Shown: one piece after another, positions 15,927 through 47,045 of the stretch | Position numbering within the stretch: position 1 is the stretch's first letter | Layout of the letters: every line of letters begins with the position of its first letter | NCBI GenBank assembly: GCA_965285935.1 | Contig: OZ260661.1 | Coordinates: 24,676,001-24,740,000 of the forward strand | DNA length: 64,000 nucleotides | Direction of reading: 5' to 3' | From: Ophelia neglecta | Taxonomy: Eukaryota | Translations under genes and position numbers: made by a program | Notes under the pieces: model-generated | Seen by the model: the letters and a program-made list of their open reading frames with translations, nothing else | What the model was told of the DNA's origin: nothing | Databases searched by the model: none

Positions 15927-16383
15927 TAACCTCAAAAATGTTGTTAATGAATTTTTTATACCTTAATCCTTTTTGTGTAATTACTGATAATGTTTAAGGT
16001 TATCAAATAATTTACCTGTTCCAGATTTTAGCCTATTTCATGCAAGTATACTTTGTATAAATCTGAAGAAAAAAAAACTAGTGTGTGTTTGGAATTTCAG
16101 ATAAACTTGAACACTGGGTTCCTGAACTGTGGCGGTGTCTGCCGATGGCAGAATGGGCAAACTGCTTTGAATGGCTGTGGACAATGTAATGAAATCAACA
16201 ACATAAATCATGAAAAATTGGAACAGAAGGTACTCAACATTTGAAATGACACTGTTATTTATTAATGCACAACATATTTATTTGGTTCAATTAATATTAC
16301 ATTTCAAGCAACTCGCTCATTAGGTACAAGGTAGAAGTTTGAATTTACTTGACAATGTCCTTTAACAAAGCTTTCTTTTGCAG

Positions 16384-17241
16384 ATATCATACCAGAAGTA
16401 TTTTGTCTTGAATCCGATAAAGCTGGGAACGTCAAATCTACAAATGCAATGTGTTAACTCAATTTCATCACTAAATCTTCTTCTAAGTAGTGATTCTTTA
16501 ATTGCTGGCAATGTCAGAAATATCCACACAAGTAGTATACACACAAGTAGTATGTCAGAAAATGGGGATGATGAAGAGGTTGTTAAGACAGAGGTTTCAC
16601 AGAATCTTGGTGTGATCCTCACTACAAAAAGCCATGTGTGCAATATATGTGGAAAGAAATTCTTAACTGCTAGAGGGTTGAAAGTCCATCTGTGCACTCA
16701 TAGCCAGGAGATGCCTAACATATGTGATACGTGCGGAAAGGGGTTCTTTACATCGACAGAATTGGATATCCACCGTATCGGGCACAGTAAGGAGGAGAGA
16801 CCATACAAATGTAGCTACTGTGGTAAAGGCTTCAAAACAGCATCTCATCTGGAGAGCCACCTGCGTAAACACACAGGAGAGAGACCTTACTCATGTTCTG
16901 TCTGTGGAGAAACCTTCCCAAGTTACGTCCAGCTCAAGAGGCATGGATACAAACACAGCGGGGAGAAACCGCATCAGTGTGAAAAATGTGGGCAGAGATT
17001 TCTAACTGCACAGGAACTGATCTACCATCGGAGAGTGCATACGGGGGAAAGACCATTTGTGTGTCGCCAGTGTGGAAAGGCTTTCAAGCAGCATAGTCAT
17101 CTATATCACCACCAGAGGGTGCACAGCTCAGAGAGGCCTTTTGTCTGTGACATCTGTGGCAATAAGTATAAAAACAAAGGTACCCTGGATCGTCACAAGA
17201 ACAAGGTCCATAGTGGAGATATTTTAGAGGTGGAAGTTTAA
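16384..17241 (+). CDS. C2H2 zinc-finger protein, 7 tandem fingers (terminal exon)
   Basis: Seven C-x2-C...H-x3/4-H fingers with HTGERP/HSGEKP linkers. Acceptor ttttgcAG at 16383; an in-frame phase-0 upstream exon ending 16229 (CAGAAG|GTACTC) is plausible; alternative start ATG 16552; AATAAA at ~17361. Confidence 0.9.
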   Translation: MSYQKYFVLNPIKLGTSNLQMQCVNSISSLNLLLSSDSLIAGNVRNIHTSSIHTSSMSENGDDEEVVKTEVSQNLGVILTTKSHVCNICGKKFLTARGLKVHLCTHSQEMPNICDTCGKGFFTSTELDIHRIGHSKEERPYKCSYCGKGFKTASHLESHLRKHTGERPYSCSVCGETFPSYVQLKRHGYKHSGEKPHQCEKCGQRFLTAQELIYHRRVHTGERPFVCRQCGKAFKQHSHLYHHQRVHSSERPFVCDICGNKYKNKGTLDRHKNKVHSGDILEVEV

Positions 17242-24283: not shown

Positions 24284-27200
24284 ATGGAATTAGCAGAGCA
24301 GTTTATCCGTCAGATCACTAAGGACACCCAGTCCGAAGACCGCCTGGTCCTAGCTCAAACCCTGCTGAGAGATGTCTCCCAGCAGACCTCAGATGGAGTA
24401 CAGTATGACGGCGACACCGTATCAGAGATTGTGAGGGTTCTGCTCAGGGTAACCCTTGATTCTGATTACAATACGTCCAAACTGAGGGAGTGGCTCCTGA
24501 GCCAGGAGGTCAAGGATGTGGTGTTTGGACTCACCGCGGGCCCGGGGACAGCATCAGCCGTTCTGCGGGGGATGCTAATAGCTGTCGAGGAAAAAGGGGT
24601 CGGGTTTGAAGACTTTATAACATGGTGCGGAGAGTTGGCAGGGACATGGTTTGTGAGCACGAATGGCAAAGTGGCCCCGACGAGCCCGGGCTTTATATTC
24701 TGTCTGTTTGAATTTAGATACCTGTCCGGCGACCGACAGGAGGATGCCTGTGGACATCGAAAGTCATCATTCGCGGACAGAGACAGACACCTTCTCCCCC
24801 TGGTGGTGGCGGCTCTCCATACAGAGACAGGGGAGTCCATCAATAAGAGTGACCGGGAAGGACACACGGCTCTCCACATAGCTTCATCTGTCAGCAGGCT
24901 CCCCCAAGTCACCAGGGCCCTGTTGGGACACCCCGACATAGATGTCAATGTCAGAGACAACAAGGGGAGAATCCCACTAGCTCGCCTTGTCGAACGTTCA
25001 GACCTGGACGATGATGAATCTCCGTCAGCTCATTACCTCCTGGAACATCCAAGTACAAATGTAACCATATTAGACAACCAGAATAAAACGGTATTGGATC
25101 ATTGTTTGGACAATCTCGGTGGCCCACTGGAGTCTGTGAAAGTGGCTGTACAGCTGATTGGCTTGATATGTGAGCACCCCACAGCGACCCCGGATATGAT
25201 CACACTAGGAGTGGAGAGACTAACAAGACTAGAAGTCCCTGAAAGTCTACGAGCCATGTATAATGATGTTATAGTTAAGCTTGCCGCAAACACTAAATTC
25301 AATATCAACACATTTCTGAGAGACGGGAAGACGATTGGTCATTTAGCCGCCTCTCAGAAGAAGGGCGATATTGTAATGAAACTCATAGATATCACAGGAT
25401 TTGACCCTAAAATCCCCGACAGTCTGGGTAACACTACACTCTACTACGTCTGCGCTAATCTTCCAACAGAGTCAGCAATTGCCGTACTCGACCACTCAAA
25501 CGTTACCTGGGACTTTGCTCATAGGAACAAGGGGGAGCAGACGGTCCTGGACTACTACGAACGACTGCCGGATAGCAAGAGAGACCCCTTGTTGTTAGCT
25601 ATACTGGAGAAACGAGTGGGCCGTGTGACAGTCAACGTAGGACGGCAAGGTATGTGGTACATGTATGATATCAGTTTTAAAGTATTAGTTATAGAATGGG
25701 TTTCTGGAGATACTCAGATGAGATAAACATTGAAGCGACAGCCCTTGTCGTTCTGTGTTGCCTATAGCCGAGATATCGGGGGTGAGGACTAGTGGGATTT
25801 TAATTATATAACGTAGTGGAGAAATATCGTAGGAGGGAGAACATTGTCAGGGAATCACCAGATGATTGAGCCTGAGAACATTCCCTGTAAAAATACGCTA
25901 CTCACCTCTGATAATTCCTTTATAATTCTTTCGCACACTAATATGCTCCCCTATTCCGTAAGCCTGTTTGTCCAGGGCTGGGGACTTCTTGAAGAATATC
26001 ATGACAGTTTGGTGCGGTAAAACCCTGTGTTATACTCCACGTAGGAGATGATTTCCATCGATGGACTCGAGATTGGCTTATAATTAGTAATGTTTGCATT
26101 GCTTTTTGAAAATTATACGGCCTAAAAGCAAACAGTAGGAAGGTTCGATAGTTTCCTATCCGTAGGGGCCTTCCATACTGCAGTTGCAAGGCCGGGGGTA
26201 TATCGGGTTTAGGCTTAGGTTGGTATAGGAGGAGTTGGGAGGACCTTCCAACCAGCAGACACATAACATGTATATCTATCAAAGGAGTGGCCTTCTTTAT
26301 AATATCGAGTGTGAATAAGTTACGTTTCAAGTTCGTGTTTTTCATGATCGTATGGTGTCTTGTTATAATAATAATGTGGCACGCATTCCCGTTTCTACAC
26401 ATACCACGTGTACTGTCGTGCGCTCAGGAGATTGTGCGAATAGCTGTGTGGGCGGTGGGAGTTGGATACATCAAGACCCGCTGCTCTATGACCTTGTCCT
26501 CATGACAGAGACAGCATCTCCTCTCCGTGAGCCCATGCATCCCTCCAGCTACCACCTTACACGTCCGTATTTAATGGCGCCAGGAGTCGTGAATATTCAC
26601 CAGCAGTGAACCATTATAAATATAATAATGTCTTTCTCTATTTACATATATACTTATCTGTAGCGGCCCAGAGACAGGTTCCGGAAGTTGCTGTTTATGT
26701 TCCGATTAGACCAATCCAATGGACCCCCCACGCCCCCGGCCAAGGCAGCGGGACGCCGGTAAAAGTCCTACCAGCAACGCCCGACATTATGACCAGGAAA
26801 CTGGACATGGTCTCTCAAGATCAGGTAAACGCTGTTCGTCATATGACAAAGCGCGATAGTAAATATACAAATATATTTATATATTGTTTGTTTTCATTTA
26901 ATAAGAAAATCCATGTTCCCACACCTAATCCGCATGTTTAAAAGTTTGCCACCCCACCAGGTGTACCCTATGGATAATGCCGCTAAGGGGCGCTGTTGTA
27001 TCATATCCGTGCCTACCTTTGAGGTTCCATGGCTGATTGATCTTCCCGGCTATCACAACGATAGTCAGAGATTGGGAGAGCTGTGGTCAGGTTTGGGATT
27101 TGAAGTCACCTTACCAAGTTGCCATGGCGACAGATATCTCACTGCCCAGGTACTGATTCACCGCTATATGGATTATATATTTAATAAATTACAGTGTGTT

Positions 27201-28822
27201 ATTGAGGCTTATTGACCTGATCGAAACATTCAGAAATGTATACAGTGCGAATGCGAAAGCCTCGATTTCTTCCTGGGTCTGTCAGGCCATGAAGCCTCTA
27301 TACAACACTGTTATTGCCTAAATACCTTGCAGGAGATAGAAAAGTCGGTGGAGGAGTTTTCTCAGAGTCTGTCCGGGTCAGACCAGTGTGTTGTCCTAGC
27401 TTTACTCAGTCACGGTGGCGAAGGCTTCATCTACGGCAGCGACGGTAATAAGGTTAATTTGGAGAGGCTGTTCAGACACTTGGATAACGAAAGATGTCCT
27501 GTCATGGCGGGAAAACCTAAAGTGGTCGTCATCCAAGCCTGTGCCGGGGTGAGTATACGTCATTGCCTCGTATAGTAAGTACAGGGAAACCTGTGAATTA
27601 AGACCACCCAAGGGACTAGAAAATGCTTGTCTGATTTTTGAGGTGATCTGTTTAAACAGGCTATTTAACATAGAATGTATACATTATGGTTCTCATATAA
27701 GTGGTCTGAATTGACAGGTGGTCTGATTATAGAGGTGGCCTTTAAGGCAGGTTTCACTGTATAACGATATACAAATATTCCATGACATCTCATACAACGA
27801 TTACATTTGTTTATCAAATTTCTGATTTACCTTATTTTACTAAAGTAGATCTGAAAACAGTACACATTAAATAACCTTACACACTTCTCCCAATATTGAC
27901 CACCTGTTCCCCACAGTCGGCCACTGACTTGGGGGTCACCGCAGGTCACAGATTCTCTCCGGCTGTAATGGCAGCAGATCCGAGACTTGACCTTCCAACA
28001 ATGTCGGATTTTATTATCTGCTCACCTTCGCTCGCAGGTAACTGCCTAGGAATTATTCTTTTTTATTGTTGCAATTCGAATCCCAGAATATTTCGAGAAA
28101 GCCACTGTAATGCAGTTAAAAGCGTTTTATACCGGTAACCAACCTGGCTCACTGGGGATTATCGTATGTCTTTTCTGCCGATTCCAGGGCTGGCTTCATA
28201 TGTGTATAACACTCCAGGACGAGGGAGTGTTTTCCTCGAAGCCTTTGTGGATATCTTTAGTCAGCGCGCCAAGGAAGACGATATTCACACTCTCATGACA
28301 TGGGTAGGTTCACAGAGTCATAGGGTTCAATGTCATATGATCGTATACAGTGAAACCTGCCTTAAAGACCAGCTCTATATTAAGACCAACTGTCAATTCA
28401 GACCACTAATATAAAGACCATATCATACACTTTCAATGTATAACATCCTGTGTAAACAGACCACCTTTATAATCAGACATGTATTTTCAGGTCCCAACGA
28501 TATGATCAAAACTTTTGTGCGAAACAAGAATATACTAGATATTTCTTCTTAATATGCTTGAGTATTTCAGGTTAACCACAAGGTGTCGAAGGCCAGGACA
28601 CTGGTTGCACATCCTGGAGGAAACTCGGCTAATTGCAAACAGATGTCTCGCATTGAGAGCTGCTTAACCAAGCTCCTGTACTTCTATCCCGGCACCGAAC
28701 AAAATCCCGACAAGAACGGCCGCCAGGAAAAAGCACAAATTATTAATAAGAACATTAAATATATCCTATGGATAGTATCATCTATAATGATGGCCATTTT
28801 ACTTCATAAAATTTGGAACTAA
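24284..28822 (+). CDS. Ankyrin-repeat/caspase (peptidase C14A) fusion protein, 806 aa, with a hydrophobic C-terminal tail
   Basis: Seven GT-AG exons splice in frame without stops: 24284-25649, 26664-26824, 26961-27149, 27333-27548, 27917-28037, 28188-28303, 28571-28822 (2421 nt). Ankyrin motifs DREGHTALHIA, DVNVRDNKGRIPL, DGKTIGHLAA, DSLGNTTLYY. Caspase motifs VYPM..KGRCCII, LGFEV, LLSHG (His 27411), GKPKVVVIQACAG (Cys 27540), PTMSDF, GSVFL, KQM...LTKLLYFYP. AATAAA at 28872. Confidence 0.9.
27582..27759. mobile_element. Tc1/mariner-pogo-type MITE in a caspase intron
   Basis: TA-CAGGGAAACCTG...CAGGTTTCACTG-TA; same family as 57373-57550. Confidence 0.85.
28348..28497. mobile_element. Truncated copy of the same MITE, opposite orientation
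   Basis: TA-CAGTGAAACCTGCCTTAAAGACC...; second TIR absent. Confidence 0.7.
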
Positions 28823-30842: not shown

Positions 30843-32432
30843 ATGCAACCAAATTTTACAAATATCCCACCATTTCCTCTTGCCATATCGAGCCATGATT
30901 GGTCAAATCTTATCCTGTTGGGATCCAAGATGGCGGAAGCCGAACTGGACACGTCGATAGGAGAGGAAAGAAATTTACAGATTATTCCAGGAGCGAACCC
31001 GATTCTTCACCAAATACTATGTGGTTTGGACAACAAAAGTGGTTCCGAAGTGATAGAAGATATTTTGCATGAAGTGGATTTACAAGTTTTGGCAGAAAAC
31101 AGACTTTTGATATCGAACGTGGCTGTGACGCAGCATTCTACACTCTGTACGGCTGAAAAGGTAAACATTGACGGTAAGCTTTTCAAACTCAAAGAAAGAC
31201 GGAGCGAGAAAGCTTTAGCAGAGGATATTATTAACCTTTTCCTGTATGTGTCAAACTATACAGAAGAATTTCCAAAAGATATATATAAAGACAACAGGAA
31301 AATTCCCATTATATCGGCCACAAAAACACCCAAATTGGCGAAACGTAACACCACTATGAAAGATTATACCATGAATATGACGGAGGTGTTTCAATACATA
31401 AAGGAAAGCAAAGAACGGGATCAGAAACAGGGTGATTTGGTCACATCCGTTAGATTGGAAATAGAAGGACAGATTCAAACACTTATGAATAGAGTGCAAA
31501 AACTTGAAGAAGAAAATGCGACTCTCAGAAAAATCATTTCAGACATTACTGGGCCCGAAAATCTAGTAGCAGCAAGCTGTCAGCAGAGTAATAAGCCCGA
31601 TGAAAATGCTGTACGCTCAAGTGAAACGCAAACTACCTTTGTGTTAAACGACAAAGTTAATGATGCGAAAAGTGACACGGGTGCACAACGTCAAACAAGC
31701 TTAGAAGGTGTGACCCCCTCCGATAACAATAAGTTGTTACCGGGCCAAATCTCTCAGAAGGCTAACGATCAGCTGTTTCAGGACACGACCCCTAAGTCAA
31801 CAAGTGCCTATGGCCCAGGTGACTTCCCTCCCTTAAGCCTCACCCGAGACCAGCGATCGCCGCTTGAAACAACTGGCAATGATTCATGGGAGATGCGAAT
31901 GAGTCTCAGAACTCAGCGGGACCGACAGCGTCGAATCGAAAGAGAACAAAATTTGAACTCTGATCGGGGGAAAAACTCCCAGATGATGAACCAGCCCAGA
32001 ACTAAACCGCTACAAGGACGTACATGGGTCACAGGAGAAAGTGTATATGTAAAGAACATCGCCGTAGACTATGACGAAACAGATGCTTCGATAGCTCGCG
32101 ACGTGCGAGGACATGCACAGGACAAAGGGTTGACAATCATGTCCTGTAGAGTTATCCGTAACAGATACAATGACACTTCCGTGGGCTGTAAACTATTTGT
32201 CCCCAAAGACCAAGTGTGTAAAGCCCTAGGGCCGGGTTTTTGGCCAAATGGCATATCATGTCGCAGGTGGGAGCAAAGAAATTCTGGATATCGACCCCGT
32301 GGAAATAACTTTTTTGATCGTGATGGGAACTGGCGGGACGATACTGCTGACTACGGGGAAAATACGGCATATCACAGTTGGGGTTATAGTGAAGGTTACG
32401 ATCACGGCGAGAACCCTTACTTCTCCAATTGA
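30843..32432 (+). CDS. LINE ORF1 protein (coiled coil + C-terminal RRM-like domain)
   Basis: 529-aa ORF 109 bp upstream of ORF2; heptads LEIEGQIQTLMNRVQKLEEENATL; VYVKNI...GCKLFVP...FWPNGISCRRW. A better-context ATG lies at 30930. Confidence 0.8.
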   Translation: MQPNFTNIPPFPLAISSHDWSNLILLGSKMAEAELDTSIGEERNLQIIPGANPILHQILCGLDNKSGSEVIEDILHEVDLQVLAENRLLISNVAVTQHSTLCTAEKVNIDGKLFKLKERRSEKALAEDIINLFLYVSNYTEEFPKDIYKDNRKIPIISATKTPKLAKRNTTMKDYTMNMTEVFQYIKESKERDQKQGDLVTSVRLEIEGQIQTLMNRVQKLEEENATLRKIISDITGPENLVAASCQQSNKPDENAVRSSETQTTFVLNDKVNDAKSDTGAQRQTSLEGVTPSDNNKLLPGQISQKANDQLFQDTTPKSTSAYGPGDFPPLSLTRDQRSPLETTGNDSWEMRMSLRTQRDRQRRIEREQNLNSDRGKNSQMMNQPRTKPLQGRTWVTGESVYVKNIAVDYDETDASIARDVRGHAQDKGLTIMSCRVIRNRYNDTSVGCKLFVPKDQVCKALGPGFWPNGISCRRWEQRNSGYRPRGNNFFDRDGNWRDDTADYGENTAYHSWGYSEGYDHGENPYFSN

Positions 32433-32541
32433 AGATGCTTCGTTTATATGCAAAGTTTAAAACGTCTCTGAAAATGTATTGTAACGTTATAATATATGTT
32501 TGCGCTGTGTCATGTAAAGGTGGCAGTTTAGTATTTGTAAC

Positions 32542-35500
32542 ATGGACAGTATGTTCAAGGTAGCTACGTTAAACGCAAGGGGATTGGGTGATATTAAAAA
32601 AAGGAGGGACATATTTGAGTATTTGAGAAAGCAAAATTGTAATTTATATTGTATTCAAGATTTTCACTGTACCACAAAACTTGAAAACCAGTACGAGAAA
32701 GAGTGGGGTTATAAGTGTATTTTTAGCTCAGTCTCCTCATGTAGTAGAGGTGTTGCATTGCTCTTTAACAACAATTTTGAATTCCAAATTCATTGCACAA
32801 AAATAGACAAAGAAGGGAATTATGTTGCGTTAGACATCACTATTGAAGGCACTAGGTTAACGTTAATCACATTGTATGGGCCAAATAGAGACACTCCGGG
32901 GTTTTATTTAAATATATCCAATATTGTTAATGAATTAGAAAATGCTACTGTTATCATATGCGGAGACTGGAACTTAGTGAGAGATCAATCAAAAGACACT
33001 AAGTATTACAGAAACGAAAATAATTTAAAGTCCAGAGAGGTTGTCGAAAATATGTGCGAATTGTTTAACTTATATGATCCCTGGCGATCATTGTACCCTG
33101 ATACCAGAAGGTATACATGGCGTCAAAAACGCCCGATAAAATTTGCTAGGCTGGACTTCTTTTTAGTAACTGAAGATTTGCTTAATCTAACCGATAGGGT
33201 GGATATTCTCCCCTCCTATCGATCCGATCACTCCATGGTCGTTGCTGACTTTGAATTAAAGACGCAAAGCAGGGGTAGGGGATTTTGGAAACTGAATACA
33301 TCTCTATTGAAAGACCCGGTATACATAGAAAAAGAAAAGGGAATTATTAGGGACACTATTAGCAAATATGCAGCCCCAGGGGAAGACCTTTCTAAAAAGG
33401 ATATTAAGTTAAATATATCCGACCAACTCTTCTTCGAAATGGTTAAATTAGATGTAAGAGGTTTTTCTATTTCGTATGCGGTGGCTAAGAAAAAGGAGAG
33501 AGAGCGTAAAGAAAAGCAGCTGGAAGAGAAAATACTTACCCTAGAGGCCAAATTAACCTCTGCGACCATTTCACAGTCAAATAAGGAAATCAACTCCACT
33601 ATAGAGTCAATTGATATTGTAAAGTCAGAATTGGAAAATATGAGACAGGAAAGAGTAAGAGGCATATTATTACGGGCGAAATCTCGATGGCATGAAGAAG
33701 GGGAGAAAGCGACAAAATATTTCTGCAGCCTGGAAAAGCGGAACTACACCGCCAAACTTATATCTAAAGTAAATGACAACGGTAGTGAAATTACTGATCC
33801 GAAATCAGTTTTAGGAAAGGTTGAAGAATTCTACAAATCATTGTACTCCTCCAAGTGTTCCAATTTAAAACATTTAGATTATTTTTTAAACAACTTTAAT
33901 GTGAAGAAAATTAATGATGCACAGAACCAAATGTGCGAAAGCCCATTTCAGGAATCTGAGCTTAAAGAAGCAATAAAGAACAATGCTAACGGTAAAACCC
34001 CGGGCTCTGATGGATTTCCCGTTGAGTTTTACAAGATGTTTTGGAATGAAATAGGTTACTTTTTATTGAGATCTATTAATAATGCCTTCCTTACCAAAGA
34101 ATTATCTCCCATTCAAAAACAGGGGGTCATAACTTGTTTACCAAAAGAGGATAAGCCTAGGCAGTATTTGAAAAACTGGCGTCCCATAACATTACTGAAC
34201 GTTGATTATAAAATTATATCCTCCGTTTTAGCTAATAGAATGAAGATTCCATTACAAGACATCATAGGAGAAAACCAAAAAGGCTTCCTCCAGGAAAGAT
34301 TTATAGGCGAAAACACTAGATTAGTATATGATATTATAGATATCTTACAAAGTAGACACCAAACAGCTCTACTCCTACTCGTTGACTTTGAAAAGGCGTT
34401 TGATTCAATCGAGTGGAGCTGTATTGAAAAGGTATTGGTCGCTTATGACTTCGGAGAAAATTTCTTAGCCTGGTTTAATTTACTTTACAGAAATTCAGTT
34501 AGCTGCGTGATTAACAATGGGTTTCCATCACAGTTCTTCAGTCTTGGCAGGGGATGTCGTCAAGGTGACCCCATATCACCGTACTTGTTTATATTAGCTA
34601 TAGAGCCGCTGGCTCAAGCTCTTAAAAATGACAAACAGGTGGTTGGCATTAGATTAGAGGGTTATGAATTTCTCTTAGGTCAGTACGCGGATGACACCTT
34701 CCTGCTCTTGGACGGGTCACCTCAGTCTCTTAGGGCGGCAATGAATAATTTTATAAAGTTTGAGAGCACGTCTGGGCTCAGAATTAATATTGATAAGACT
34801 CAGGCGGTATGGGTAGGGCACAACTCGCACCTACAAAATAAAATGTGCGATGAAATCACGATCAAGTGGGTCGACTGTTTTAAGTTATTGGGAATAAAAT
34901 TCACTCAAAACTTAGATAATATTATTGAAATTAACCTAAGAGATAAAATTACGGAGACAAAAGCTCTTTTAAGGGCGTACTCGGGACGGACATTGAGCCT
35001 GTTAGGAAAAGTGACTGTGATAAAAACTTTGGCCATACCAAAACTGGTTCATGTCTTGTCCGTTCTGCCTCGTCCGTCAAAGTGTATTATTGATGAACTA
35101 AAAAAGTTGTATAATGAATTTCTATGGAATGGGGGGAGGTCAAAAATTAAACGGTCAGTTTTGTCTAAGTCATATGACAAAGGCGGTTTAAAATACACTG
35201 ATTTAGATGTATTTATTGATTCCTTGAAAATGTCTTGGGTGTATAGACATGTTAAATCAGCAAACTCTGAAGGTGGTTGGCAACAGCTACTCAATGTAAT
35301 TATTCCTCAGATGGATATGGGAAGCATATGGGATCTAGATGCCCCATCTTTAACTAATTTGTCAATGTATTTAAAGAATCCATTCTGGAGGCAAGTGTTA
35401 ACTGGCTGGAGTAAATTTGTAAATTTGTCAACAGAAGGGACTAATAATACTATAATGAATATGCCAATTTGGTCATCATGTTATATTAAAAACGAAAATC

Positions 35501-36357
35501 TGCAAGTACTGAAAAGAAAATTGTACTCTAATGGGTGTAAAATGTTTAGAGACTTGTTTGATGTAACGTCAGGTACTTTTTTGTCTTACAATGAGTTTAG
35601 AGTTAAATTTGATGTTGACATTAACTTCTTAGACTATGCAAGCTTAGTCGATAGTATACCACAGACTTGGAGACATCAGGATATAAATGTAAACAATAAC
35701 AATTCTCCTGCTTTGTCCAAGATATTGACGTGTAAAAAGGTGTCTTGTTTTGTGTATTGGGAATTTATTAACAGCGATACCACATCTGCAAAATGTAAGC
35801 AAAAATGGTCTGAGATTGTTACTTGTGAATTCGTAGGAAAAGACTGTGAAATGTTCTTCTTACTGCCTTTTCGTATATCTGTTGAAAGTAAACTAAGAGC
35901 TTTTCAATTTAAAATTTTGCATAGGGTTCTTCCGACAAATAGTTGGTTATACAAATGTAAAATTAAGGACTCGCCAAAATGTGATTTTTGTGGTACAGGG
36001 GTGGAGACCCTCGAACACCTTTTTTGTAACTGCCGTATAGTTCAGTCCTTATGGGAAGGCTTAAGTAACTGGTTGTGCCCTGTGGTAAGCCGTCTCCCAA
36101 TTGGAAATGTTAAATCTATTCTGTTAGGCTACGTAGATGATGATCCACATCTTGAGTTAATAAATATACTACTGATGGTGTCCAAAAGATATTTTTATGT
36201 GAGGAAGTGTAATTCTAAATCGGTTAAGCTGCTTGATCTGTTATATTTCATTAAACAGTATTACTATATAGAAAAGCATATTGGCAAGAATAACTGTGTA
36301 TTTTCGAAAAGACTAGAAAAATGGACACCAATCATAACAAAGTTGGAAGAATTGTAA
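32542..36357 (+). CDS. pol: LINE ORF2 protein: APE endonuclease + reverse transcriptase + C-terminal CCHC (zf-RVT)
   Basis: 1271 aa. EN motifs NARGL, GDWN, RLDFFL, SDH; Tx1-like GFWKLNTSLL and WHEEGEKATKYF; RT motifs WRPITLLNVDYK, DFEKAFD, GCRQGDPISP, YADD; CDFC...EHLFCNC. Confidence 0.97.
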   Translation: MDSMFKVATLNARGLGDIKKRRDIFEYLRKQNCNLYCIQDFHCTTKLENQYEKEWGYKCIFSSVSSCSRGVALLFNNNFEFQIHCTKIDKEGNYVALDITIEGTRLTLITLYGPNRDTPGFYLNISNIVNELENATVIICGDWNLVRDQSKDTKYYRNENNLKSREVVENMCELFNLYDPWRSLYPDTRRYTWRQKRPIKFARLDFFLVTEDLLNLTDRVDILPSYRSDHSMVVADFELKTQSRGRGFWKLNTSLLKDPVYIEKEKGIIRDTISKYAAPGEDLSKKDIKLNISDQLFFEMVKLDVRGFSISYAVAKKKERERKEKQLEEKILTLEAKLTSATISQSNKEINSTIESIDIVKSELENMRQERVRGILLRAKSRWHEEGEKATKYFCSLEKRNYTAKLISKVNDNGSEITDPKSVLGKVEEFYKSLYSSKCSNLKHLDYFLNNFNVKKINDAQNQMCESPFQESELKEAIKNNANGKTPGSDGFPVEFYKMFWNEIGYFLLRSINNAFLTKELSPIQKQGVITCLPKEDKPRQYLKNWRPITLLNVDYKIISSVLANRMKIPLQDIIGENQKGFLQERFIGENTRLVYDIIDILQSRHQTALLLLVDFEKAFDSIEWSCIEKVLVAYDFGENFLAWFNLLYRNSVSCVINNGFPSQFFSLGRGCRQGDPISPYLFILAIEPLAQALKNDKQVVGIRLEGYEFLLGQYADDTFLLLDGSPQSLRAAMNNFIKFESTSGLRINIDKTQAVWVGHNSHLQNKMCDEITIKWVDCFKLLGIKFTQNLDNIIEINLRDKITETKALLRAYSGRTLSLLGKVTVIKTLAIPKLVHVLSVLPRPSKCIIDELKKLYNEFLWNGGRSKIKRSVLSKSYDKGGLKYTDLDVFIDSLKMSWVYRHVKSANSEGGWQQLLNVIIPQMDMGSIWDLDAPSLTNLSMYLKNPFWRQVLTGWSKFVNLSTEGTNNTIMNMPIWSSCYIKNENLQVLKRKLYSNGCKMFRDLFDVTSGTFLSYNEFRVKFDVDINFLDYASLVDSIPQTWRHQDINVNNNNSPALSKILTCKKVSCFVYWEFINSDTTSAKCKQKWSEIVTCEFVGKDCEMFFLLPFRISVESKLRAFQFKILHRVLPTNSWLYKCKIKDSPKCDFCGTGVETLEHLFCNCRIVQSLWEGLSNWLCPVVSRLPIGNVKSILLGYVDDDPHLELINILLMVSKRYFYVRKCNSKSVKLLDLLYFIKQYYYIEKHIGKNNCVFSKRLEKWTPIITKLEEL

Positions 36358-44146: not shown

Positions 44147-44545
44147 CAGGTAACCCAATTCATAACATTATGGAATGGTTTACACAGAATTTAGAACAGG
44201 TAACCCACTTTATAACATTATAGAGAGGTTTTACATAAAATTTAGAACAGGTAACCCACTTCATAACATTATAGAGAGGCTTTACATAATATTTCGAACG
44301 GGTCACCAATTTTATTACATTATAGAGAGGCTTTACATAAGATTTAGAACAGGTAACCCACTTCATAACATTATAGAGAGGTTTTACATAAGATTTAGAA
44401 CGGGTAACCCACTTTATAACATTATAGAGAGGTTTTACATAAAATTTAGAACAGGTAACCCACTTCATAACATTACAGAGAGGCTTTACATAAAATTTAG
44501 AACAGGTCACCCACTTCATTACATTATTGAGAGATGTTACAGAAG
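44147..44545. repeat. 51-bp minisatellite, ~7.5 copies
   Basis: Unit TTTAGAACAGGTAACCCACTTYATAACATTATAGAGAGGYTTTACATAAAA; explains the 17-aa-periodic ORFs on both strands. Confidence 0.95.
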
Positions 44546-47045
44546 ATTTCCCTATTGTCCAAGTCGGAATTCCTAGCCCCGTCCCCCATCGCTTCCGCCG
44601 CAATGTTAGTGCGAGCTATCAAGGAGTTATCTAAATGCCTCGGAGCATTCGTTTACTAATATCTGAATCCCTGACAGACTCCTGGCTGTCTAGGTAGCTC
44701 CTTGCAGATACAACCTGGAAGAAATTAAAGACTAATTGATAACAGTTTTTGAAATATATTTAAGGCCTACCTAAATAAGAAACGGTAATTTAGGTAGGTC
44801 TGATGGTTTAGATAAATTTTATAATTGAAACCGAAGAAGTGACATTTAATTTAATCAATAAAACAACACACTGAGTGAAAACACTCACTGACAAACAGCT
44901 TCTATCGAGTAGCTAGGATCTCATGCTTAACTGATGTCACTGATACACCGGTGCTCCTTTTCTTTATTTAATATCAAAGGTCATGGCGTCTTTTCACATT
45001 CCGACTCTTTCTTGTAAATTAAAACAAACCAGTGGAATACATATCTGCACTGAAAATTAAAAATATCTTTCGAGCGATGTCTTGGGAGAATAAGTTCCCG
45101 TCAGTGCATGGCGTAGACTATTGGGGATCAATGGTTGGAAAGCAGAACTCTATTGTCTCTGAAAGCGAATATCTGAGGGAATTCAAAAATAAGAAGAATA
45201 TTGGGTCATATTGTAATTTCCAAAAATCATTTGAAATATTAACTCAAAGAAAGCCAAATCTGTCATTTTCTACCTGATGGCCATTTAATAACTCGAGGGC
45301 TGCGTCATCTCCGGTATTTTAACAGGAGAACAAGACATGGTACTCGTGGCAATGTGACAAATAATGACAAGAAAGAAGAAGTATACATAAGTGAGTTTTT
45401 TATTTTTAGTATTTTCTTTTGGCAACTACACAACAGTATGCAAGAATATCGGTGGACATCAAGTATAAACCCTTTGAAAACAATATTATTTCTGGTGGAT
45501 GTGGCTTTCACCGTGGAATTTTTCCATAGACCGTCTATTCACCATTTAAGGCATTAATATTTAAAAAAAAACACAACTGGTGATAAATTAGCAGGCTTGT
45601 TTGGTCAGAATTAGACCTAACATTTTACAAGTTTCTTAGCCTGATGGTATGACAATTATCCAGTAAAGAGTATTTGTTTTAACACATATACTATTGTATT
45701 TTTACCCTAGTAAATTAGTTTCTTATGATTTCAAACGAACAGAATAAGCCGCGTAAGTTAATAATTCTTTCTTCTCAATCAAATTAATTGAATACATATA
45801 AGTTTATGCTGAGGGCTTGTAAAACGGCGACATTCTAAGCCAATGACAACCTATCCTTGCCTACCTTTATAGCTATCCTGTTCATTTTTTGTAATTGGTG
45901 GACTTTTCGGTGTCTGTTTGTTATTATCTTGTTATAAACTGAACTCCTGTCGTCTGCCAAGGAAATTTTTCTGTCTATTTGCGCCTGTCCGTCGGTTTGT
46001 TAACAATTTCATCATTTGACCTTTATTAACATTTTCCCCTGCGTCCATTTATGACTGTCATGTCATTGCCCTGTTTGTTTAAGCTGATTGACCTGGTTAT
46101 AGAATTGTCACTAATGGCATTGATTTGTCTTTTTGAAGGGAACCTGCCAACATTAATTGTATTGTTTAAAGCAGATCGTTGAGATTATTGTGTCTCTGCC
46201 GTCGATGTCAAGCCTAGTTCGCCGAAACAGAGGTCTCTTTTACACACTCTTAGTCCAAACTTAATGTAGGCCGTGCGACAAGTTTTGGGGAGTGGAGTCA
46301 GGAGGAAAAATTTAAACAATTCGCATTATTTAGACTAAGTGTGATTTAGTTGAACATGTCTGATAGCTTTTCGAGACTGGGACTTTTTTCGCTTACATGC
46401 TTTAAGGTTAACATTAAAAACCCAGGTACCATAAGTGAAGACTTTTGAGTGCGATTTTTAGGCTAAAAAGTAAAATGTCAGTTGTAGTAATCAACCCAAT
46501 GATTAGTTACTCCATACAAGATGTCATCAGCACCCTGAAGGGGAAAGAGAACAGGGTGTTTAAATAACTAAGGATTAGAGGAAAGAGGCATGACATTGAA
46601 CAAGAAACATATAATATCAATTAAAAAATGAAATGGCCTATGTACATAGCTAAAAATCTGACAATCGCCTCCTATTCGAAAAACATTTCATGCTCACATG
46701 CTTTTAGGTTGGGTTCTATTGTATTATCCTTTAGCTAACGAAAAAAGTACATAGCCAAATAAAATATTTAATTAATGTAACTTACTTCTTGAAAAGAACA
46801 GACTCTAAAGCGAGGGGTATCTAGGAAAAATGGGCTTTCGAAGATTAGACAAATTTGAAAGAAGGAAAAGCATCCAAAACGGTATGACAGCGAAAAATTC
46901 CATTTCATTGTTAACGCAACGCCGTGAAATCTGACGGGAAATTCCACGATTATCCAAGACCAATCACAAATAGATAATCATCTTGAGTTAACTATTTATT
47001 GAGAGAGGTCGTTGGTTGTTATTTGAAAATCAATAACTGAGCCAG

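What the first reader, a model, noticed from the sequence alone, without database searches (positions are those of the whole stretch)
26961..28303. Caspase keeps its catalytic dyad but has lost both S1 arginines that define Asp specificity
Established: caspases bind P1 Asp through two Arg residues and a Gln (caspase-3 R64 in SRSGTDVD, Q161 in QACRG, R207 in YSWRN). Seen: the first motif reads DLPGYHND (Arg to Leu, codon 27042-27044), the second reads GLASYVYNTPGRGSVF (Arg to Val, 28202-28204), and the pentapeptide is the unusual QACAG, while Gln, His and Cys remain. Inference: two substitutions to hydrophobic residues in an otherwise intact domain suggest a re-tuned protease with non-Asp, possibly hydrophobic, P1 preference, or else a catalytically weak scaffold. 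It is not a MALT1/metacaspase-type Arg/Lys enzyme, since those have Asp, not Gln, two residues before the Cys.
Basis: partly seen in the sequence, partly recalled or inferred. Interest (0 to 1): 0.8.

Follow-up and report, generated by a model that had tools for sequence, protein, structure and literature searches.

The report
Ankyrin-caspase family without Asp-binding arginines
This is an intact, selectively maintained caspase gene from a family of about 50 copies in one invertebrate genome; the family keeps the catalytic machinery but has lost the arginines that make caspases cut after aspartate, so it probably cuts after a different residue.

Summary
The His/Cys dyad (SHGG, QACAG) and the S1 Gln are present. 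The first S1 Arg (caspase-3 R64, caspase-1 R179) is Leu40 (27042-27044).

This is a family trait. At least 49 other loci in this genome match the catalytic exon, and 22 were examined. All have Leu/Ile at the first site and QAC[A/N/S/Q]G. They form one clade, sister to a canonical QACRG copy of the same genome. Asp46, His, Gln and Cys never vary, while the R341 position is the second most variable column of 208.

The gene is under purifying selection: dN/dS is 0.15 against its closest paralogue, and 8 of 9 allelic differences are synonymous.

It most likely carries an ankyrin-repeat prodomain (about 806 aa in all). This copy alone has a C-terminal hydrophobic tail.

No public full-length protein is more than 38% identical, and all 35 of those aligned keep both arginines.

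Best reading: an active protease that is no longer Asp-specific. P1 is predicted basic or polar, and may differ between paralogues.

No RNA data or biochemistry were available, and the joined protein was not folded. The scan had already flagged the same trait elsewhere in this genome (s1-739913).

The parts
24284..25649 (+). Probable first coding exon: 455 codons plus 1 base, an N-terminal region with ankyrin repeats (the prodomain).
   Evidence: Open frame from ATG 24284. Pfam Ank_2 matches at 8.5e-12. The donor AAG|GTATGT lies at 25649/25650, in phase 1. Paralogues align from residue 1 at 48-52% identity. The intronless copy L001 carries the homologous ankyrin region and the caspase in one open frame.
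26664..26824 (+). Probable linker exon. It holds an internal ATG at 26789 that would start a short 309-aa form.
   Evidence: The acceptor (ctgtag) and the donor (CAG|GTAAAC) are phase-compatible with both the ankyrin exon and the next exon. There is no RNA evidence, so use of this exon is inferred.
26961..27149 (+). Caspase exon with strand beta1 and loop L1. It holds Leu40 (27042-27044) in place of S1 Arg179/R64, and the invariant Asp46 (27060-27062).
27333..27548 (+). Catalytic exon: His102 (27411-27413), and QACAG with Gln143, Cys145 (27540-27542) and Ala146.
   Evidence: Pfam PF00656 matches at 1.6e-15. Caspase-2 chains match at 5.8e-14. His, Gln and Cys are invariant in the 18 family rows analysed.
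27917..28037 (+). Intersubunit-linker exon (phase 1 at its end). GVTAG stands where caspase-3 has GIETD (caspase-3 sequence from my own knowledge), so the canonical processing Asp is Gly. Other Asp residues are D151, D168, D172 and D178.
   Evidence: The exon junctions match the intronless paralogue L001.
28188..28303 (+). Exon with loop L3. Asn195 (28208-28210) stands in place of S1 Arg341/R207. Tyr194 and Val202 stand where canonical caspases have Trp.
28571..28822 (+). Last exon, with the stop codon at 28820-28822. The caspase C-terminus (LLYFYP) is followed by a 43-residue extension that ends in a hydrophobic 19-mer (28760-28816).
   Evidence: The other paralogues end 10-18 residues after their xYFxP motif (54 in L041), without a hydrophobic segment.

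Best explanation
The region encodes the protease domain of an intact, selectively maintained true caspase (C14A fold).

The gene belongs to a lineage-specific family of roughly 50 genes in this lophotrochozoan genome. The family is closest to caspase-2-like enzymes and most likely carries an ankyrin-repeat prodomain.

Before it expanded, the family replaced the S1 Arg179 by Leu and lost the Arg of QACRG. Since then the residue at the Arg341 position has varied freely between paralogues (N, V, T, K, E, D, Y and others). His, Cys, Gln283 and the Asp six residues after the Leu never change.

In this copy the pocket is Leu40 / Asp46 / Gln143 / Asn195. It can no longer clamp a P1 aspartate between two guanidinium groups.

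Inference: the enzyme is still a working cysteine protease, but with a non-acidic P1. A basic or polar residue reaching the now unpaired Asp46 is most likely, as in metacaspases and MALT1. The paralogues probably differ in P1 preference.

Shown here: the gene anatomy, the substitutions, their fixation or variability in the family, and purifying selection. Inferred: catalytic activity, P1 preference, and the join to the ankyrin exon.
For: - Fold and dyad: Pfam and PDB matches of the exons. A paralogue's domain folds with pTM 0.80 and matches caspase-3, -7, -9 and CED-3 at TM 0.78-0.87 normalised to the target chain.
- Substitutions.
- Family: 69 further exon-3 matches in the genome, of which 49 have E <= 4e-16, all open.
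- All 22 other loci read have Leu/Ile at the first S1 site. The 21 whose pentapeptide aligned read QAC[A/N/S/Q]G; in L033 the alignment stops at QA.
- They form one clade (SH-aLRT 96) with the trait columns removed. The clade is sister to the genome's own canonical QACRG copy.
- Column statistics: Leu40 is near-invariant; Asp46, His102, Gln143 and Cys145 are invariant. Position 195 is the second most variable of 208 columns, at 3.0 bits.
- Selection: dN/dS is 0.15 in the caspase exons and 0.33-0.35 in the ankyrin exon against the closest paralogues, at dS of about 1.1. In exons 4-5, 8 allelic differences are synonymous and 1 is not.
- A second, unrelated assembly (ENA ERZ25069296) holds the same family: ankyrin exon, LxGYxxD and QACNG, with Arg or Asn at the 341 position. 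It shows no DNA match to this genome.
- Literature: in metacaspases and paracaspases Arg179 aligns to Leu, and the Asp six residues later binds a basic P1 (PMC2064784).
Against: - No RNA run exists for this organism, so expression and splicing are unproven.
- No enzyme assay exists.
- The joined protein could not be folded, and the tools return no coordinates, so the pocket geometry is inferred from alignment only.
- Asp46 is also invariant in canonical caspases. Its conservation therefore does not by itself show a role in P1 binding.
- Hypervariability at position 195 and in loop L3 could reflect relaxed constraint on a cleft that is no longer used.
- Gln, not Asp, precedes the Cys, unlike all Arg/Lys-specific C14B enzymes.
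Confidence: 0.45

Rival explanations
1. The enzyme is active, but the pocket, lined by Leu40 and lacking both arginines, selects a small or hydrophobic P1.
For: - Leu at the first S1 site is fixed in the family.
- The closest paralogues have Val at the 341 position.
- Where caspase-3 has its processing site GIETD, the family reads GV[TMAS]AG (one copy GVPAS). That would fit a small P1 if the family processes itself (inference).
Against: - In this copy the second residue is Asn, not Val.
- An unpaired, invariant Asp46 lies at the position that forms the floor of S1 in MALT1 and the metacaspases (PMC2064784). A carboxylate there is unfavourable next to a hydrophobic side chain.
Confidence: 0.15
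2. The protein is a non-catalytic or very weak scaffold or regulator, FLIP-like. It would pair with canonical caspases or other partners through its ankyrin repeats.
For: - Three residues that canonical caspases need are lost: Arg179, Arg341 and the Arg of QACRG. Both specificity Trp residues are also replaced.
- The substrate loop L3 is the least conserved part of the domain.
Against: - His102, Gly103, Gln143 and Cys145 are invariant in all 18 rows of the family alignment, across synonymous divergence above 1.
- Known pseudo-caspases such as cFLIP have lost these residues (own knowledge).
- dN/dS of 0.15 shows that the domain as a whole is constrained.
Confidence: 0.2
3. The enzyme still cleaves after Asp or Glu, because another basic residue compensates. 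Candidates are Arg199 of PGRGS or Arg159 in the linker.
For: - Arg199 lies four residues after position 195 in the same loop.
- Some paralogues have Lys at position 195, and a homologue in another organism has Arg there. A single Arg suffices for Asp specificity in granzyme B (own knowledge).
Against: - Caspase-7 has the same PGRGS Arg and still needs its own S1 Arg four residues earlier.
- Within the family position 199 is R, Q, E, K or P, so it is not a conserved substitute.
- Nothing replaces Arg179.
Confidence: 0.12
4. The gene is decaying or is never expressed.
For: - No RNA data exist.
- The family includes retrocopies and at least one truncated-looking member (L001/L002 and L033).
Against: - All exons are open, with consensus splice sites.
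- dN/dS is 0.15.
- Allelic differences are 8 synonymous to 1 nonsynonymous.
- The catalytic residues are intact.
Confidence: 0.05

Closest known systems
Caspase-2-like CARD caspases of molluscs (e.g. XP_062603141.1 Saccostrea cucullata, XP_033764175.1 Pecten maximus, CASP2 of Sepia pharaonis)
   Same: These are the best full-length public matches, at 32-38% identity over the domain. Human caspase-2 is the best solved match to the catalytic exon. Fold, dyad, Gln283 and Asp(+6) are the same.
   Different: They have CARD prodomains (P0061 shows no prodomain domain), QACRG and both S1 arginines. Here the prodomain is ankyrin repeats, the pentapeptide is QACAG, and S1 is Leu/Asn.
Effector caspases-3 and -7 (C14A)
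   Same: The domain length and loop L3 register match caspase-7, including the shared PGRGS. A paralogue's model matches caspase-3 and -7 structures at TM 0.85-0.87, normalised to the target chain.
   Different: R64/R87 is Leu, R207/R233 is Asn, W206/W232 is Tyr, and W214/W240 is Val. The processing Asp of IETD aligns to Gly.
Metacaspases and the paracaspase MALT1 (C14B), Arg/Lys-specific
   Same: Leu stands at the Arg179 position, followed by an Asp six residues later. In those enzymes that Asp binds the basic P1 (PMC2064784).
   Different: Gln rather than Asp stands two residues before the Cys. Asn rather than Asp/Glu stands at the 341 position in this copy. Overall sequence and fold are those of animal caspases.
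ANK caspases of parasitic flatworms and of the annelid Alitta virens (PMC11463336)
   Same: The prodomain is made of ankyrin repeats instead of CARD or DED, in a lophotrochozoan.
   Different: The paper reports single genes, says nothing about active-site or S1 residues, and found none in 23 molluscs. Here the family has about 50 copies with an altered S1. Orthology was not tested.
cFLIP and other pseudo-caspases
   Same: A caspase fold that has left the canonical Asp-directed cascade.
   Different: Pseudo-caspases lack the catalytic Cys and/or His (own knowledge). Here both are invariant across the family.

Membership tests
Caspase, MEROPS C14A / Pfam PF00656 | p20/p10 caspase fold | tested here: met
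   PF00656 matches exon 3 at 1.6e-15, with weaker matches on exons 2 and 5. Caspase chains in the PDB match. The model of paralogue L001 reaches pTM 0.80 and TM 0.78-0.87 (target-normalised) to caspase-3, -7, -9 and CED-3. The window's own joined protein was not folded.
Caspase, MEROPS C14A / Pfam PF00656 | Catalytic His in SHG and Cys in QACXG | tested here: met
   SHGG (His 27411-27413) and QACAG (Cys 27540-27542) are present. Both are invariant in the family.
Caspase, MEROPS C14A / Pfam PF00656 | Basic S1 pocket of Arg179, Gln283 and Arg341 (caspase-1 numbering) | tested here: not met
   The three positions read Leu40, Gln143 and Asn195, so one of three is kept. The pocket definition comes from PMC2064784.
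Caspase, MEROPS C14A / Pfam PF00656 | Cleavage after Asp | not testable with these tools
   This needs recombinant enzyme and P1-diverse substrates.
Caspase, MEROPS C14A / Pfam PF00656 | Asp processing site in the intersubunit linker | tested here: inconclusive
   The position of caspase-3 IETD reads VTAG (Gly), and reads Gly (Ser in one copy) across the family. Other Asp residues (D168, D172) exist in this copy only or in its closest paralogues.
Metacaspase / paracaspase (C14B) | Leu at the Arg179 position and Asp six residues later | tested here: met
   Leu40 and Asp46 are present. Asp46 is invariant, and PMC2064784 describes this state. The Asp is also present in canonical caspases.
Metacaspase / paracaspase (C14B) | Asp two residues before the Cys, and Asp/Glu at the 341 position | tested here: not met
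   Gln143 and Asn195 stand at these positions. Glu or Asp occurs at position 195 only in some paralogues.
ANK caspases (PMC11463336) | Ankyrin-repeat prodomain in the same protein as p20/p10 | tested here: inconclusive
   An ankyrin exon lies 1.3 kb upstream on the same strand, with phase-compatible consensus splice sites. The intronless paralogues L001 and L002 carry both parts in one frame. There is no RNA for this gene.
ANK caspases (PMC11463336) | Common descent with the flatworm or Alitta virens ANK caspases | not tested
Pseudo-caspase (cFLIP-like) | Loss of the catalytic Cys and/or His | tested here: not met
   Both are present and invariant.

The most novel reading that the evidence does not exclude
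A clade of about 50 true caspases has abandoned aspartate specificity altogether. It uses a hypervariable residue at the Arg341 position, over a fixed Leu/Asp/Gln pocket, to give each paralogue its own P1 preference: acidic with Arg/Lys, basic with Glu/Asp, neutral with Asn/Thr/Val.

With variable ankyrin prodomains for recognition, this would be a diversified, immune-type protease repertoire. It would also be the first non-Asp/Glu lineage inside C14A.
Probability: 0.3. Interest if true: 0.85.

Novelty: new variant of a known kind. Interest (0 to 1): 0.62.

Why it matters
Strict cleavage after Asp defines the caspases and rests on Arg179, Gln283 and Arg341.

A large, conserved and expanding clade that keeps the catalytic residues but has dropped both arginines would show that the caspase scaffold can leave Asp specificity without becoming a dead enzyme. 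It would also be a natural intermediate between the caspase pocket and the metacaspase/paracaspase pocket (Leu plus Asp at +6).

Because one pocket position varies between paralogues, the family offers a ready-made series for testing how P1 specificity is encoded in clan CD proteases.

The ankyrin prodomain and the copy number suggest a role in lineage-specific cell-death or immune signalling. That link is speculation.

Tried and rejected
- **RNA evidence.** The only three runs that hold the stretch are DNA from one sample. Their contigs run through the introns, so expression and splicing could not be tested.
- **Close relatives by word search.** The ankyrin exon gave only generic ankyrin proteins at 23-42% identity. 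The intronless paralogue L001 gave two DED caspases at 33-35%.
- **Exhaustive search with the catalytic exon.** No full-length protein was more than 38% identical over the domain. The best hits were exon-sized fragments.
- **ESM Atlas with the ankyrin region.** Generic ankyrin clusters only.
- **Joined spliced protein.** It has no reference, so it was never sent to a search or fold tool. It was built only inside scripts, for local alignment to proteins already fetched. An intronless paralogue was folded instead.
- **Pocket geometry.** The fold tools return no coordinates. Whether Arg199 can enter S1 could not be checked structurally.
- **Organism identity.** Not settled. The mitochondrial cox1 has 8 TGA codons, so it could not be searched by reference. 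ARAGORN found no tRNA. The nearest named relatives are molluscan caspase-2-like proteins.
- **Rejected: a Val replacement at the second S1 site.** Searches place the Arg at Asn195.
- **Rejected: a metacaspase or paracaspase.** Searches put the domain among animal caspases.
- **Rejected: a pseudogene.** Searches show an intact, constrained gene.
Full report
**What is at the coordinates**

The stretch 26961-28303 is eukaryotic coding DNA with introns. Four exons lie there: 26961-27149, 27333-27548, 27917-28037 and 28188-28303. A fifth exon (28571-28822) completes the domain. All have AG/GT borders and give one continuous frame.

Pfam's caspase model matches the catalytic exon at E = 1.6e-15. Solved caspase-2, -8 and -3 chains match the same exon at E = 6e-14 to 1e-10.

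**The two S1 positions**

First site:
- An alignment to the Drosophila effector caspase (3SIP) puts Leu40 (27042-27044) opposite its S1 Arg, LKSRAGTNVD against LIDLPGYHND.
- A MAFFT alignment with 35 public caspases does the same.

- Caspase-7 YSWRSPGRGSWF aligns without gaps to YVYNTPGRGSVF, and CED-3 WRNSARGSWF gives the same register. MAFFT agrees.
- The Arg is therefore replaced by Asn195 (28208-28210), not by Val193.
- The Arg in PGRGS has a direct counterpart in caspase-7, which still has and needs its own S1 Arg four residues earlier. It is not a displaced S1 Arg.
- The two flanking Trp residues that canonical caspases have here (the S2/S4 Trp of caspase-7, from my own knowledge) are Tyr194 and Val202.

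**Gene model**

- Upstream on the same strand, a 480-codon open frame starts at 24284 and carries ankyrin repeats (Ank_2, 8.5e-12).
- It has a consensus donor, AAG|GTATGT, at 25649 in phase 1. This fits the acceptor of a small exon, 26664-26824, which in turn joins 26961 in phase 0.
- The result is a protein of about 806 residues. An internal ATG at 26789 would give a 309-residue short form.
- No RNA run exists for this organism. The three runs that hold the stretch are DNA of one sample.
- Independent support comes from two intronless copies on the same chromosome (L001, L002). There the homologous ankyrin region and the caspase domain lie in one open frame. Their sequence runs straight across every exon junction of my model. 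At least in the family, then, the ankyrin region and the caspase are parts of one mRNA.

**It is a family trait**

- Copy number: the genome (762 Mb, 223 contigs) gives 96 exon-level matches to the caspase model. The catalytic exon of this gene has 69 further matches, 49 of them at E <= 4e-16 and 46-82% identity, all open.
- Shared traits:
  - All 22 have Leu at the first S1 site (Ile in one small subclade), in the motif LxGYxxD.
  - The 21 whose pentapeptide aligned read QAC[A/N/S/Q]G; in L033 the alignment stops at QA.
  - None has Arg at the 341 position.
  - Many have a homologous ankyrin exon upstream.
- A canonical copy with Arg and QACRG also exists in the genome (L010).
- Tree: built on four exons with the trait columns removed, it puts the 18 family rows in one clade (SH-aLRT 96). 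That clade is sister to L010, and it sits among public CARD caspases of the caspase-2 type. The tree is a quick one, on an alignment projected onto this gene's coordinates.

Column statistics:

| Position | State in the family |
|---|---|
| Leu40 | near-invariant |
| Asp46, His102, Gly103, Gln143, Cys145 | invariant |
| Position 195 | second most variable of 208 columns (3.0 bits; D, E, K, L, N, S, T, V, Y) |
| Position 146 (pentapeptide X) | variable (A, N, Q, S) |

**Selection**

- Against the closest paralogue (L023, 82% identical in the catalytic exon), the Nei-Gojobori dN/dS is 0.15 over 250 caspase codons and 0.35 over the ankyrin exon, at dS of about 1.1.
- The DNA runs show a second haplotype. 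Of the nine listed differences in exons 4-5, eight are synonymous. In the ankyrin exon, ten of sixteen change the residue.

**Outside this genome**

- The exhaustive search with the catalytic exon found 2212 proteins. No full-length one is more than 38% identical over the domain.
- All 35 full-length ones aligned keep both S1 arginines where those columns are aligned (P0133 is unalignable at the first site), with QACRG or QACQG.
- The best hits are exon-sized fragments that show the family's hallmarks.
- Two of them lie on contigs of one ENA assembly (ERZ25069296), which has no DNA match to this genome.
  - One contig carries an ankyrin exon, LxGYHND, QACNG and SYVYRTPG, so Leu at the first site but Arg kept at the second.
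  - The other has QACQG, with Asn at the second site.
- So the family exists in at least one other organism, and the Arg341 loss is secondary and patchy, whereas the Arg179 loss is shared.
- The nearest named proteins are caspase-2-like proteins of bivalves and a cuttlefish. I could not settle the species.

**Literature**

- No paper in the library contains QACAG.
- Caspases with ankyrin prodomains have been described in parasitic flatworms and in one annelid, Alitta virens, and were not found in 23 molluscs. That paper does not discuss active-site or S1 residues (PMC11463336).
- Mytilus caspases are reported with Arg341 substituted in two members, but with Arg179 conserved in all (PMC3037946).
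- The S1 pocket is defined as Arg179/Gln283/Arg341. In metacaspases and paracaspases Arg179 aligns to Leu, and an Asp six residues later binds the basic P1 (PMC2064784).

**How it most likely works**

Shown: an intact, constrained caspase fold with the full catalytic apparatus, whose S1 pocket reads Leu40 / Gln143 / Asn195 over Asp46.

Inferred:
- Without either guanidinium group, a P1 aspartate cannot be bound in the canonical way.
- The formal charge of the pocket residues goes from +1 (two Arg, one Asp) to -1.
- Leu followed by Asp at +6 is the arrangement used by Arg/Lys-specific relatives.
- I therefore favour a non-acidic P1, basic or polar, for this copy.
- The hypervariable position 195 suggests that paralogues differ, possibly from acidic (Arg/Lys) to basic (Glu/Asp) preference.
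- Where caspase-3 has its processing Asp (GIETD), the family has Gly (GVTAG; Ser in one copy). This fits a family that is disconnected from Asp-directed activation. The caspase-3 sequence here is from my own knowledge.

The main rival is a FLIP-like regulator. The strict conservation of His, Cys, Gln and the neighbouring Gly across synonymous divergence above 1 argues against it.

**Limits**

- The joined protein has no reference. It was not searched or folded. It was assembled only inside scripts, for local alignment.
- I folded the intronless paralogue L001 instead: mean pLDDT 78, pTM 0.80, linker disordered. Its best structural matches are caspase-3, CED-3, and caspases-7, -9 and -8, at target-normalised TM 0.78-0.87.
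- No coordinates are returned, so side-chain placement in S1 remains untested.
- The same trait had already been flagged by the scan on another piece of this genome (s1-739913), as had the ankyrin prodomain (s1-741943, s1-740037).

Noticed in passing
window 28691-28822 (hydrophobic 19-mer at 28760-28816): Only this copy ends in a 43-residue extension with a hydrophobic C-terminal segment (mean Kyte-Doolittle 1.68 over 19 residues), which looks like a tail anchor. Eleven of 12 other paralogue tails read end in a short conserved tail (CP.G[RK].G.DW...), and none has a hydrophobic stretch.
   Followed up: partly
window 27497-27810 and 28282-28595 (introns 3 and 5 of the caspase part): A very high-copy interspersed repeat. 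The summed contig depth reaches 1e5 to 6e5, against about 20 for the flanks, with many contig joints between the two copies.
   Followed up: no
L001 (G000:C1:20777152-20780886) and L002 (G000:C1:20931578-20935309): Two intronless copies of a family member, 97% identical to each other over the caspase domain, carry the ankyrin region and the caspase in one 476-aa (L001) open frame. In L001 the N-terminal part sits in a separate 216-aa frame just upstream, so the copy may be broken there. They look like duplicated retrocopies.
   Followed up: partly
window 30843-36357: Two long open frames on the + strand, 529 aa and 1271 aa. By eye the second looks like the endonuclease/reverse-transcriptase protein of a non-LTR retrotransposon that appears intact. 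No family search was run on it.
   Followed up: no
window 16378-17241: An open frame with a run of C2H2 zinc fingers joined by TGERPY/F-type linkers.
   Followed up: no
window 44160-44603, both strands: A tandem repeat of about 51 bases keeps open frames on both strands. The peptide unit is roughly YNVMKWVTCSKFYVKPL.
   Followed up: no
L045 (G000:C223:3197-7537): A mitochondrial contig. The gene order is nad3, nad2, cox1, nad4L, all on one strand (assigned by eye from the ORF translations, apart from cox1). cox1 has 8 in-frame TGA codons, presumably read as Trp.
   Followed up: partly
P0093 (XP_077535220.1, Haemaphysalis longicornis): A tick protein of 810 aa combines ankyrin repeats, a RING finger and a canonical caspase domain (QACRG, both S1 Arg). 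This looks like an independent ankyrin-caspase fusion outside the Lophotrochozoa.
   Followed up: partly
G000:C5 4.3-5.3 Mb and 12.15-12.35 Mb; C1 127.9-128.0, 139.8-139.9 and 142.9-143.0 Mb: Family members sit in dense tandem clusters on two chromosomes. The window's gene is a lone copy, far from its closest paralogues on C5 (4.94, 4.99 and 4.33 Mb).
   Followed up: no
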